Shown: piece after piece, positions 39,022-42,000 of the stretch
Layout of the letters: every line of letters starts with the position of its first letter
Numbering within the stretch: the first letter of the stretch is position 1
Assembly (NCBI RefSeq): GCF_031769215.1
Contig: NW_026781945.1
Coordinates: forward strand, 62,001 to 126,000
Origin: Ylistrum balloti
Lineage: Eukaryota
Direction: 5' to 3'
Length of the DNA: 64,000 bases
Notes under the pieces: generated by a model
The model's database searches: none
What the model was told of the DNA's origin: nothing
What the model saw: only the letters and a program-made list of their open reading frames with translations
Made by a program: the position numbers and the translations under genes

Positions 39022-42000
39022 TCAATCCTGGTAGTCTGGATTCTTCCTTAATATCACAAAGCCTTCCATAAGTGGACTCAGTGGCAGGTCTGTTATGGGT
39101 TAAGGAAACAGAATGAAGTGTTATAGTCACTAAATACAGAGAGTCAAGAATAAAATGGCCCTTATGTTCATATGCATGATTTACATAACTAATTAAACCA
39201 AAGTGAAATGAGCTTTTAATCTAGAATCATTAATTTAAATCTTAATTCCAGTCACAAGAGCTAACCAGTTTATGTTTTGATGATCAAGTGCAATTTTGTA
39301 TGGCTTTCAAAAGGTTATAGTACTTGAATAACATGGCTGATTTATTGAGGTTTTACCTAAGTGTTAAAATGTAGTATATGAAACAGCAATGATGGGTACA
39401 TTTACTCTTCTCATCTTGAATCAAAATATAAGTCCTACACCAGACCAAACCAAGTAAGTTTTATATACTCTATGAATTGTTTAGAGCCAGTTCATGCTAA
39501 CTTCTGAATATAGAGTTACCAGACAGCTGTCCTGTAACCAGAGCTAGATCTTTCACCTAGCCTTATTGGTCTGAATTACCAATGCCATGTCTACATTCCA
39601 AAGCCATGCATTATAATTGCATGATCATTAGAAGTCTAAGCTTTGATAAACAGGCTGCATCACTTTCATTAATTGCTGACAGCTGGAACTATTATAATTC
39701 ATTGTAATTTATAAGTATTTACCCTAAAAGAAATTCTAGCTATTCCATGATTGACACAAGGAAAAACATATTTGTATTCCCCCCACCCCCCTTTTTTTTA
39801 ACATGACTTTTTGTATCTTTTCAATGGAAGTTGCTGATGTTTGGTCATGTATGTAAAGGAAAAATTATTACTTATCAATTTTTGTGTGAAAGAATTTTGT
39901 TGTAGACTCCAGAAAGAGGTAATTGCTTTATCATGTTGAACATGTTGAATTCTAGCCGTAAGGTTCTATTTGTTTTTAAAAGCTCCTATAAAGAGAGTTA
40001 GTACAAAGCAAGCCTCAGATATACATTTTTTCCGTAAAGTCTAATTTCATTTTGATGTGTCTTTGTAATGATATAAGAAGAGAATTGAGGTAGGGACATT
40101 AACTTCATGATATCACACTGAAAAGGATACATTCCTCTGTGGCGAGTTCTGCCCGCTCTCCATAGGCCAAAAGTACAGGTGTAGTGTGTGTTTGGAATCC
40201 TGTGATGGTTTTAGGTTTACCTGCTTGTCCGACCACATCAACAGCCTTTCAAATAAAACAAACAAACATAGAAATCACGTAGATCTAGAATTTAACCTAT
40301 ACTATGTTGATAGCTAAATATTTCGCCCTTCAAAAGGATTCAACGTGAGTGGTCTAGCTCATTTGGACAAACTTCATAGTTAATATGGATCATTTCATAT
40401 TTTTTATCTGAATCAGTTATTTCTGTCCATTTGAACTGGAAATATTTCTACTTATTTGAACTAGAAAACATCTCTTGACATGAGACAGCTTATTGTAGTC
40501 ATCGTGATGTTACCTGTCCAACTCTCACAGGAACAGGAAGTGGTCGCAGTTCTTCGTCAAAGGTAGTTAACATACGTGGTTGCATCGCTGACACAAGGTG
40601 GTACAAGATGTAATGAGATTTACCTAGGATGACTGCAACAAAGACAGTAGAGTGAAATAATATGCAAATATTCATATGAAACAAAATACATTAGAGATAA
40701 AACCATCAATTTCAAAAAATGATTTTACATATAATGTATTGTCTATCAATTTTATTTTCATTACAATTTTTTTTCCTCTCCAATTAGAACCGTGGGTAAA
40801 TGACTACTTACAGATCACGCACAAAAAATCTTCAAAATCTGAACTGTTTATGCTTTTAGTTTTGTTTAATGAGAAAATTGTTTCGATATATTTGTATCTG
40901 AACTATGAGTCATATTATTAACTAAAACTTTGCTTTCATCAGTAAGAAAAAAAGTTCAATGAAAAACTTACGATTTTTTACATCGAGACAGGCAACAAGG
41001 ACAGACATAAGCCCTGCGACTGCGACAGGTGACATAAGGGTACGGTCACTGTGGTAGGGACAAAGGGTGAGTGTACCCTTGCCCAAGTGAGCAAGTCCCT
41101 GTGCTAGCCGAACCATGAACAAGTTATTTGGGTCCTTGGCATGGTACACAGCTAACTGTCGTAACATTGCAGCTAGACGTGCATTATTTGTTCCTGAAAA
41201 AAAAAATTACACAATACAACCCATGAAATGTTTAACTGTAAAAGATTAACTGTAAACTGATGAACATACATTGAATAAACAGTTTTGTTTTCTTACAGTA
41301 GCAAAAGTGCTGACAATTAGAGACTTGATTAAAACTGTAATAACTGAAGAAGCATGCACTAATCAAAACTGTCATCACTGAAAATGTCGAGATGGTATGT
41401 ATTGGGTTTGTTTCCTGTAACACTGGTTGTGATGGACTTAATAGGTCAACTTTGTTCTTAGTTTTCATGTAAAAGTTATTTTGTTGTGATTAAGTATTTC
41501 ATAGAAATCTTTTTCTAAATGAAACATTGAACGAACAAATATTTCTTATACCTGCTCCAACCAGGCCCATGGACAAAATAGCATTGTGAGCAACTTCTGT
41601 GTCATTATCATGGGAGAACTTGCTCAGAGTGTCCAGAATGTTTAATTTTGGGTTCGACACAGATATCAGACCCAAGGCAAGTGGTACTGCTCGTTTTATC
41701 GCAGGTTCACCATAACGCAGCTATTAACAACAAAGAAAGTCACTTTATCAGTATGACAAAAACTGAGATCTACCAAAAATATTACAATATCTACATAGAT
41801 TTTTCAACAAGCTACTCTAGGTCTGAGAAGTTCTAATAAATAAAATACTAATTACTAAATCAGAACAAGCAAAAACTTACACTCATATTTGTGATACATC
41901 TTTTTTTAATCTATTGGTAATTTGCTTTAAAACCATTTTTGTAATATCTATATCTCAAGTTCACATGTCCATCTAAACATGATATATGGACTTCCTTTCT

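What the first reader, a model, noticed from the sequence alone, without database searches (positions are those of the whole stretch)
39090..40245. PSMD2 last intron is a U12 minor intron that also carries a strong U2-type acceptor (twintron-like or poison switch)
Seen: donor GTATCCTTTT at 40130 and branch/acceptor TTTCCTTAACCCATAACAG at 39090; none of the other donors I read in this window match the U12 consensus. Inside the intron, minus strand 40005-39986 reads TGTACTAACTCTCTTTATAG|G, a perfect TACTAAC branch point, pyrimidine tract and AG. Exon 20 contains a U2-like donor CAG|GTAAAC at 40220, and a donor-like AA|GTAATA lies at 39871. Known: U12 introns can be rate-limiting, and U12/U2 alternative or nested arrangements exist (Drosophila prospero twintron, SRSF10). 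Inference: joining 40221 to 39985 gives ...GAFKNK*, and joining the normal exon end to 39985 makes an immediate UGA. Either would truncate Rpn1 or trigger NMD, which could tie proteasome supply to minor-spliceosome activity.
Basis: partly seen in the sequence, partly recalled or inferred. Interest (0 to 1): 0.7.

Follow-up and report, generated by a model that had tools for sequence, protein, structure and literature searches.

The report
Conserved minor intron in PSMD2; switch unproven
The last intron of this animal's proteasome gene PSMD2/Rpn1 is a real, widely conserved minor-spliceosome (U12-type) intron, but the "strong acceptor" inside it looks like an ordinary chance decoy, with no evidence for a twintron or poison switch.

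Summary

**U12 call: strongly supported.**
- The donor GTATCCTTT sits exactly at the exon 20 end.
- The branch box TCCTTAAC lies 10 nt before the AG, and the intron is in phase 1.
- All six other species' loci that carry this intron have a GTATCCTT donor at the same codon position. All four complete orthologous introns have a U12-like branch box 11-14 nt from the AG.
- Of the 120 best database fragment clusters, 64 read through into GTATCCT, about 25 carry another, mostly U2-like, donor at the same position, and 30 have the two exons fused.
- PSMD2 is absent from the human/mouse minor-intron tables I could search.

**Twintron or poison-switch idea: not supported.**
- TACTAAC occurs at chance frequency in the window (9 found, 9.85 expected).
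- Equally pyrimidine-rich YAG sites occur about 0.7 per kb.
- The internal site is absent from the orthologous introns.
- The exonic GT "donor" is a variable third codon position of a conserved Gly-Lys.
- The proposed poison exon would need introns that mix U12 and U2 splice sites.

**Limits.** The only sequencing run found was DNA, so junction use is untested. No close relative was available.

The parts
40131..40245 (-). It ends with the first base (T) of a split Tyr codon.
   Evidence: Translation. Pfam RPN1_C, E = 2e-22. The peptide is identical in 6 of the 7 orthologous loci and differs by one residue in L005.
40122..40130 (-). U12-type 5' splice site GTATCCTTT, a perfect consensus match
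   Evidence: The same GTATCCTT donor is found at the same position in L001-L004, L006 and L007.
39090..40130 (-). U12-type GT-AG intron, 1041 nt, phase 1. It is the last coding intron.
   Evidence: No Rfam family matches inside it.
39099..39106 (-). U12 branch-point box TCCTTAAC. The branch A at 39100 is 10 nt before the G of the 3' AG (39091-39090).
   Evidence: Orthologs have TTCCTTAAC, TTCCTTGAC, TGCCTTAAC or TTCTTTAC 11-14 nt from the AG.
39022..39089 (-). Coding part of the terminal exon, (Y)[21 protein letters not shown], with stop TGA at 39024-39022
   Evidence: It is conserved in L001-L005.
39986..40005 (-). Internal acceptor-like sequence TGTACTAACTCTCTTTATAG. It is most likely an unused decoy 3' splice site.
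   Evidence: Present. TACTAAC is at chance frequency. Sites of equal pyrimidine grade are common. It is not conserved in orthologs.
40215..40223 (-). Exonic donor look-alike CAG|GTAAAC, formed by the codons GCA GGT AAA (Ala-Gly-Lys)
   Evidence: It matches the U1 consensus at 7 of 9 positions. The Gly codon is GGT, GGC or GGA depending on species, so the GT is not conserved.
39866..39873 (-). Intronic donor look-alike AA|GTAATA
   Evidence: It matches the U1 consensus at 5 of 9 positions. No supporting evidence was found.

Best explanation
Window 40130..39090 (minus strand) is a genuine U12-type minor intron of the GT-AG subtype. It splits a Tyr codon 22 codons before the stop of PSMD2/Rpn1.

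The likely mechanism follows from established knowledge of U12 introns and was not shown here. U11 pairs with GTATCCTTT, U12 pairs with TCCTTAAC, and the AG 10 nt downstream is used. U6atac then replaces U11 at the 5' splice site.

The intron position is old and widely shared. Many lineages keep the U12 signals, some have U2-type signals at the same position (minor-to-major conversion), and others have lost the intron altogether.

The internal TACTAAC-pyrimidine-AG at 40005-39986, the exonic GGT AAA and the intronic GTAATA are incidental look-alikes, that is, decoy or at most cryptic sites. They are not a built-in twintron or poison switch. Any coupling of Rpn1 supply to minor-spliceosome activity would come from the minor intron itself, through slow splicing or retention. 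Retention reads ...[12 protein letters not shown].
For: - The motifs lie at exact coding boundaries.
- The gene is PSMD2/Rpn1: Pfam RPN1_C, PC_rep and RPN1_RPN2_N, and PDB PSMD2 chains at E about 1e-40.
- L001-L004 have a GTATCCTTT donor at the same phase-1 position and a U12-like branch box 11-14 nt from the AG. L006 and L007 have a GTATCCTTAC donor.
- Of the 120 best fragment clusters, 64 read ATEE/CIL (= T|GTATCCT). About 25 have other donors at the same position, mostly U2-like GTAAR or GTATG. Thirty have the exons fused.
- L008 has GTAAGT with a pyrimidine-tract acceptor at the same position. L005 has lost the intron.
- Decoy argument: TACTAAC occurs 9 times against 9.85 expected. Sites with at least 9 of 10 pyrimidines plus YAG occur about 0.7 per kb. 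There are 12 on the sense strand of the PSMD2 span, of which I recognised 3 as acceptors of conserved exons.
- The first 300 nt of the intron show no similarity to any ortholog above shuffle level.
- The exonic GT is synonymous and variable.
- The U12 donor matches the U1 consensus at only 4 of 9 positions.
Against: - No RNA data were available, so neither U12 splicing nor non-use of AG 39987-39986 is shown directly.
- The internal site is acceptor-grade by sequence. It has a perfect TACTAAC, 9 of 10 pyrimidines and TAG|G. The composite of TACTAAC plus tract plus YAG occurs only 3 times in 128 kb of both strands, and one of those is a real PSMD2 acceptor at 45871.
- CAG|GTAAAC matches the U1 consensus as well as the real exon 19 donor does, 7 of 9 positions.
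- All orthologs are distant, with exon DNA identity of 71-90%. Conservation among close relatives could not be tested.
- The taxonomy of the orthologous contigs is unknown.
Confidence: 0.8

Rival explanations
1. Cryptic U2-type pair. The exonic donor at 40220 is spliced to the internal acceptor at 39986, removing a 235-nt intron. This would happen at a low level, or mainly when the minor spliceosome is limiting. The product is a truncated ...GQAGAFKNK* message. It would be splicing noise or a by-product of stress, not a selected switch.
For: Both sites look usable by sequence. [quoted passage not shown]
Against: It would leave a 25-nt exon 20a, which is poor for exon definition. Neither site is conserved. 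No RNA data exist.
Confidence: 0.14
2. This is a selected twintron-like arrangement or poison exon (39985-39872). It diverts PSMD2 transcripts to truncation or NMD and so ties proteasome supply to minor-spliceosome activity.
For: Regulated competition between U12 and U2 splicing exists elsewhere, for example Srsf10 (PMC7244321) and the prospero and vertebrate twintrons (PMC3564746, PMC8329584).
Against: - Both introns flanking the cassette would pair a U12-type site with a U2-type site. The U12 donor matches U1 at only 4 of 9 positions.
- No tandem U12 5' splice-site (USSE-like) element lies downstream of the acceptor.
- Orthologous U12 introns show no conservation of the site.
- One lineage lost the whole intron and others converted it. 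Any such switch is therefore dispensable.
- The motif frequencies are at chance level.
Confidence: 0.04
3. The intron is in fact removed by the major spliceosome, as a GT-AG intron that only resembles a U12 intron.
For: GT-AG termini are compatible in principle with either spliceosome.
Against: The donor matches U1 poorly (4 of 9). There is no pyrimidine tract before the AG (CCCATAACAG). Both the 9-nt U12 donor and the 8-nt branch box are perfect, with correct spacing, and both are conserved across species whose intron interiors are otherwise unalignable.
Confidence: 0.02

Closest known systems
U12-type (minor-spliceosome) introns, GT-AG subtype
   Same: It has the consensus 5' splice site GTATCCTTT and the branch box TCCTTAAC. 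The distance from branch point to AG is short (10-11 nt) and there is no pyrimidine tract. It is not in phase 0, which fits the reported phase bias of minor introns (PMC10639083). Its position is conserved across species.
   Different: PSMD2 is not among the human/mouse minor-intron genes in the MIDB supplementary tables I could search, whereas PSMC4 and PSMA1 are (PMC6717393). This is therefore a minor intron kept in this lineage and many others, but apparently not in mammals. I did not inspect mammalian sequence.
U2/U12 twintrons and nested introns (Drosophila prospero; vertebrate twintrons, PMC3564746; review PMC8329584)
   Same: A U2-like 3' splice site lies inside a U12 intron, and a U2-like 5' splice site lies nearby.
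   Different: The candidate U2 donor is 90 nt upstream, inside the exon. The products would be truncated rather than alternative functional isoforms. No RNA evidence is available. The competing sites are not conserved, whereas the described twintrons are conserved.
Cryptic U2-type splice-site activation around minor introns (review PMC8329584)
   Same: Pseudo-sites lie near a U12 intron and could be used if minor splicing fails.
   Different: Only sequence potential is shown here. Usage was not observed.
Autoregulation of SNRNP48 and RNPC3 through the USSE (Verbeeren et al. 2010, as reviewed in PMC8329584), and the autoregulated minor intron of Srsf10 (PMC7244321)
   Different: A USSE needs a tandem U12 5' splice-site repeat downstream of the regulated U2 3' splice site. 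None lies between 39986 and 39090. There are also no competing U12 and U2 5' splice sites at one exon end, as there are in Srsf10.

Membership tests
U12-type minor intron | 5' splice site matching |RTATCCTTT | tested here: met
   GTATCCTTT at 40130-40122, exactly at the coding boundary.
U12-type minor intron | Branch-point box TCCTTAAC about 10-15 nt from the 3' splice site, with no strong pyrimidine tract | tested here: met
   TCCTTAAC at 39106-39099. The branch A is 10 nt before the G of the AG, and the sequence between is CCCATAAC.
U12-type minor intron | U12 signals kept at the orthologous position in other species | tested here: met
   L001-L004, L006 and L007. 64 of 120 fragment clusters read into GTATCCT.
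U12-type minor intron | Removal depends on the U11/U12 and U4atac/U6atac snRNPs | not testable with these tools
   No RNA run was found. No snRNA genes lie in this window.
U2/U12 twintron (nested or competing introns) | A complete U2-type splice-site pair nested in, enclosing, or sharing one site with the U12 intron | tested here: inconclusive
   There is a U2-like 3' splice site at 39986 and a U2-like 5' splice site at 40220, in the exon. This gives an overlapping arrangement on paper only.
U2/U12 twintron (nested or competing introns) | Both spliced products observed in RNA | not testable with these tools
   The only run holding the stretch is DNA. Its contigs run straight through the introns and show no joints.
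U2/U12 twintron (nested or competing introns) | Competing sites conserved in related species | tested here: not met
   The Gly codon varies between GGT, GGC and GGA. No corresponding acceptor is present and intron similarity is at shuffle level. Only distant relatives were available.
Poison (NMD) cassette exon | Cassette flanked by introns with compatible splice-site types | tested here: not met
   The upstream intron would pair the U12 donor (4 of 9 match to U1) with a U2 acceptor. The downstream intron would pair the GTAATA donor with the U12-type 3' end, which has no pyrimidine tract.
Poison (NMD) cassette exon | High sequence conservation of the cassette | tested here: not met
   Nothing alignable was found in the orthologous introns.
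USSE-type regulation | Tandem U12 5' splice-site motifs downstream of the regulated U2 3' splice site | tested here: not met
   RTATCCTY has no match between 39090 and 39986.

The most novel reading that the evidence does not exclude
The internal TACTAAC-AG (39986) is a genuine, species-specific U2-type acceptor. It pairs with the exonic GTAAAC donor whenever U12 splicing of the last intron is slow. Transcripts would then be diverted to a truncated or unstable form (...GQAGAFKNK*), making output of the proteasome base subunit Rpn1 a read-out of minor-spliceosome activity.
Probability: 0.05. Interest if true: 0.6.

Novelty: new member of a known kind. Interest (0 to 1): 0.27.

Why it matters
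This adds PSMD2/Rpn1 to the proteasome genes that carry a minor intron. In the mammalian lists I searched, PSMC4 and PSMA1 are present and PSMD2 is not.

It also gives a clean example of one old intron position found in three states across species: U12-type, U2-type and lost. That is useful for studying minor-to-major intron conversion and 3'-biased intron loss.

The more striking claim, a built-in poison switch, is not supported. The site should be treated as an ordinary decoy until RNA data say otherwise.

Tried and rejected
- **RNA junction test.** The look-up of sequencing runs returned a single run, X1. Read laying showed it to be DNA of another individual, with contigs running straight through the introns, about 2.6% SNPs in the intron and no joints. 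The 20-nt internal site carries no SNP in X1. That is uninformative, because the chance of no SNP in 20 nt is about 0.6.
- **Literature.** No paper in the library pairs PSMD2 with "minor intron". The supplements of PMC11347168 and PMC10639083 held nothing usable.
- **Close relatives.** Searches with the exon 20 ORF and the exon 19 ORF found no hit sharing the window's intron-derived flanks. All fetched loci have exon DNA identity of 71-90%. I therefore did not spend a third search. Two look-ups returned no DNA.
- **Taxonomy of the orthologs.** The listing of cluster members gave no organism names. Its member P0215 turned out to be an unrelated bacterial oxidoreductase.
- **Embedded RNA gene.** Rfam found nothing in the intron or the window.
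- **Second RTATCCTTT at 21889-21881.** It lies in AT-rich non-coding DNA with no exon boundary, so I take it as chance.
- **L007 acceptor-like site.** L007 has TTTAG|G 133 nt into its intron, which looked like possible positional conservation. Its close relative L006 has TTAAG there, and the alignment is at shuffle level, so I rejected it.
- **Left out under the operators' rules.** I made no search with a joined, spliced sequence. Fragments that looked mammalian or human-like (for example P0117 and many exon 19 hits) were neither fetched nor compared further. I judged the large representative search unnecessary.
- **Not done.** I did not build a full 21-exon gene model, so the exon numbering is unverified.

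Full report
**Observation.** On the minus strand the penultimate coding exon is 40245..40131. It translates to [38 protein letters not shown] and is followed directly by GTATCCTTTT at 40130. The intron ends ...TTTCCTTAACCCATAACAG at 39090. The terminal exon continues (T|AC = Tyr) [21 protein letters not shown], with the stop at 39024-39022. The intron is 1041 nt and in phase 1.

The two predicted products read as stated...GQAGAFKNK* and an immediate TGA. The gene is PSMD2/Rpn1. Pfam finds RPN1_C, PC_rep and RPN1_RPN2_N on separate exons, and PDB PSMD2 chains match at E about 1e-40.

**The U12 call.** RTATCCTTT occurs only twice in the 64 kb. The other copy, at 21889, lies in AT-rich non-coding sequence with no exon boundary. 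TCCTTAAC lies at 39106-39099, so the branch A at 39100 is 10 nt before the G of the AG, and there is no pyrimidine tract in between. The donor matches the U1 consensus at only 4 of 9 positions.

**Orthologs.** I searched the exon 20 ORF together with its read-through into the intron, by reference. A U12 donor in phase 1 translates as Cys-Ile-Leu (T|GT ATC CTN), so protein fragments alone report the donor type. The 120 best fragment clusters divide as follows:

| Reading after the exon 20 end | Clusters |
|---|---|
| CIL (GTATCCT, U12 donor) | 64 |
| Other donors at the same position, mostly U2-like (GTAAR 11, GTATG 7, others 8) | about 25 |
| Exon 21 follows directly (fused exons) | 30 |

I then fetched DNA for several of these.
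- L001-L004 carry complete introns of 4981, 1154, 3278 and 521 nt. All have GTATCCTTT. Their branch boxes are TTCCTTAAC, TTCCTTGAC, TGCCTTAAC and TTCTTTAC, 11-14 nt before the AG.
- L006 and L007 have GTATCCTTAC, but each contig ends inside the intron.
- L008 has GTAAGT and a pyrimidine-tract acceptor at the same position.
- L005 has the two exons fused while keeping the upstream intron.

One old intron position is therefore seen as U12-type, as U2-type and as lost. PSMD2 is absent from the human/mouse minor-intron tables held for PMC6717393, where PSMC4 and PSMA1 are listed. Relative enrichment of minor introns in molluscs and a bias of minor introns against phase 0 are reported in PMC10639083. 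The taxonomy of the fetched contigs is unknown.

**The internal acceptor.**
- TACTAAC occurs 9 times in the window against 9.85 expected.
- Sites with Y at position -3 and at least 9 of 10 pyrimidines before an AG occur about 0.7 per kb per strand. Twelve lie on the sense strand of the PSMD2 span. I recognised 3 of them as acceptors of conserved exons. A site of this tract quality in a 1-kb intron is therefore expected roughly every second time.
- The full composite of TACTAAC plus tract plus YAG is rarer, 3 in 128 kb. One of those is the real acceptor at 45871. On sequence alone, the site is a credible acceptor.
- None of the six orthologous U12 introns has a comparable site at a comparable place.
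- Local alignment of the first 300 intron bases against each ortholog scores at shuffle level.
- An acceptor-like TTTAG|G at position 133 in L007 is TTAAG in its close relative L006.
- The exonic "donor" is the Gly-Lys codon pair GGT AAA. The Gly codon is GGT in four species, GGC in one and GGA in two.

**Mechanistic constraints.** These follow from established knowledge of the two spliceosomes, reviewed in PMC8329584.
- Junctions 40131>39985 and 39872>39089 would each combine a U12-type site with a U2-type site.
- The only all-U2 combination, 40221>39985, would leave a 25-nt exon.
- No USSE-like tandem U12 donor lies downstream of the acceptor.
- Cryptic U2-type sites near minor introns are known to be activated when minor splicing is compromised (abstract of 10.1101/2020.05.18.101246). 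That is the most this arrangement is likely to amount to.

**Limits.**
- The only sequencing run holding the stretch is DNA from another individual. It shows no joints and about 2.6% intron SNPs, none of them in the 20-nt site, which is uninformative. No junction could be tested.
- All orthologs are distant, with exon DNA identity of 71-90%.
- Fragments that looked mammalian or human-like were neither fetched nor compared.
- Exon numbering was not verified.

**Verdict.** The U12 intron is real (about 0.95) and is a new member of a known kind. The twintron or poison-switch reading is unsupported (about 0.04). Occasional cryptic use remains possible (about 0.14).

Noticed in passing
window 3589-3618, minus strand: Two GTATCCTT motifs lie 22 nt apart (3618-3611 and 3596-3589) in an intron. 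They sit about 95-115 nt downstream of an exon end ...YKSS|GTACAT near 3711. A tandem of U12 5' splice-site motifs recalls the USSE of SNRNP48 and RNPC3, but I saw no obvious upstream pyrimidine-tract acceptor. The window-wide count of RTATCCTY is at chance (8 found, 8.5 expected).
   Followed up: no
L005:3190-3363 and L005:4108-4290: This contig lacks the last PSMD2 intron, so its final two exons are fused. It carries two tandem copies of the fused terminal exon about 920 nt apart, and both encode ...[26 protein letters not shown].
   Followed up: partly
window 45871, minus strand: A real PSMD2 acceptor (ttttgctttatag|GTA) also has a perfect TACTAAC about 30 nt upstream. TACTAAC branch sites are therefore used by at least one genuine U2 intron in this gene.
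   Followed up: partly
window 428-2095, both strands: A long tandem array encodes repeats of TTNTTSGSWG in one frame and has open frames on both strands. GC content here is 0.45, against about 0.33 elsewhere in the window.
   Followed up: no
window 58612-58619, plus strand: ATATCCTC lies a few bases downstream of a kinesin (KIF17-like) exon end ...GIIPR|GTTAGC. I take it as chance, but it was not examined.
   Followed up: no
P0020, P0035, P0037, P0041, P0054, P0209: In one group of fragments exons 19 and 20 are contiguous, yet the sequence still reads through into GTATCCT or GTATCCC and then into GC-rich sequence. These are either genomes that lack the upstream intron or transcripts that retain the U12 intron. 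I could not tell which.
   Followed up: partly
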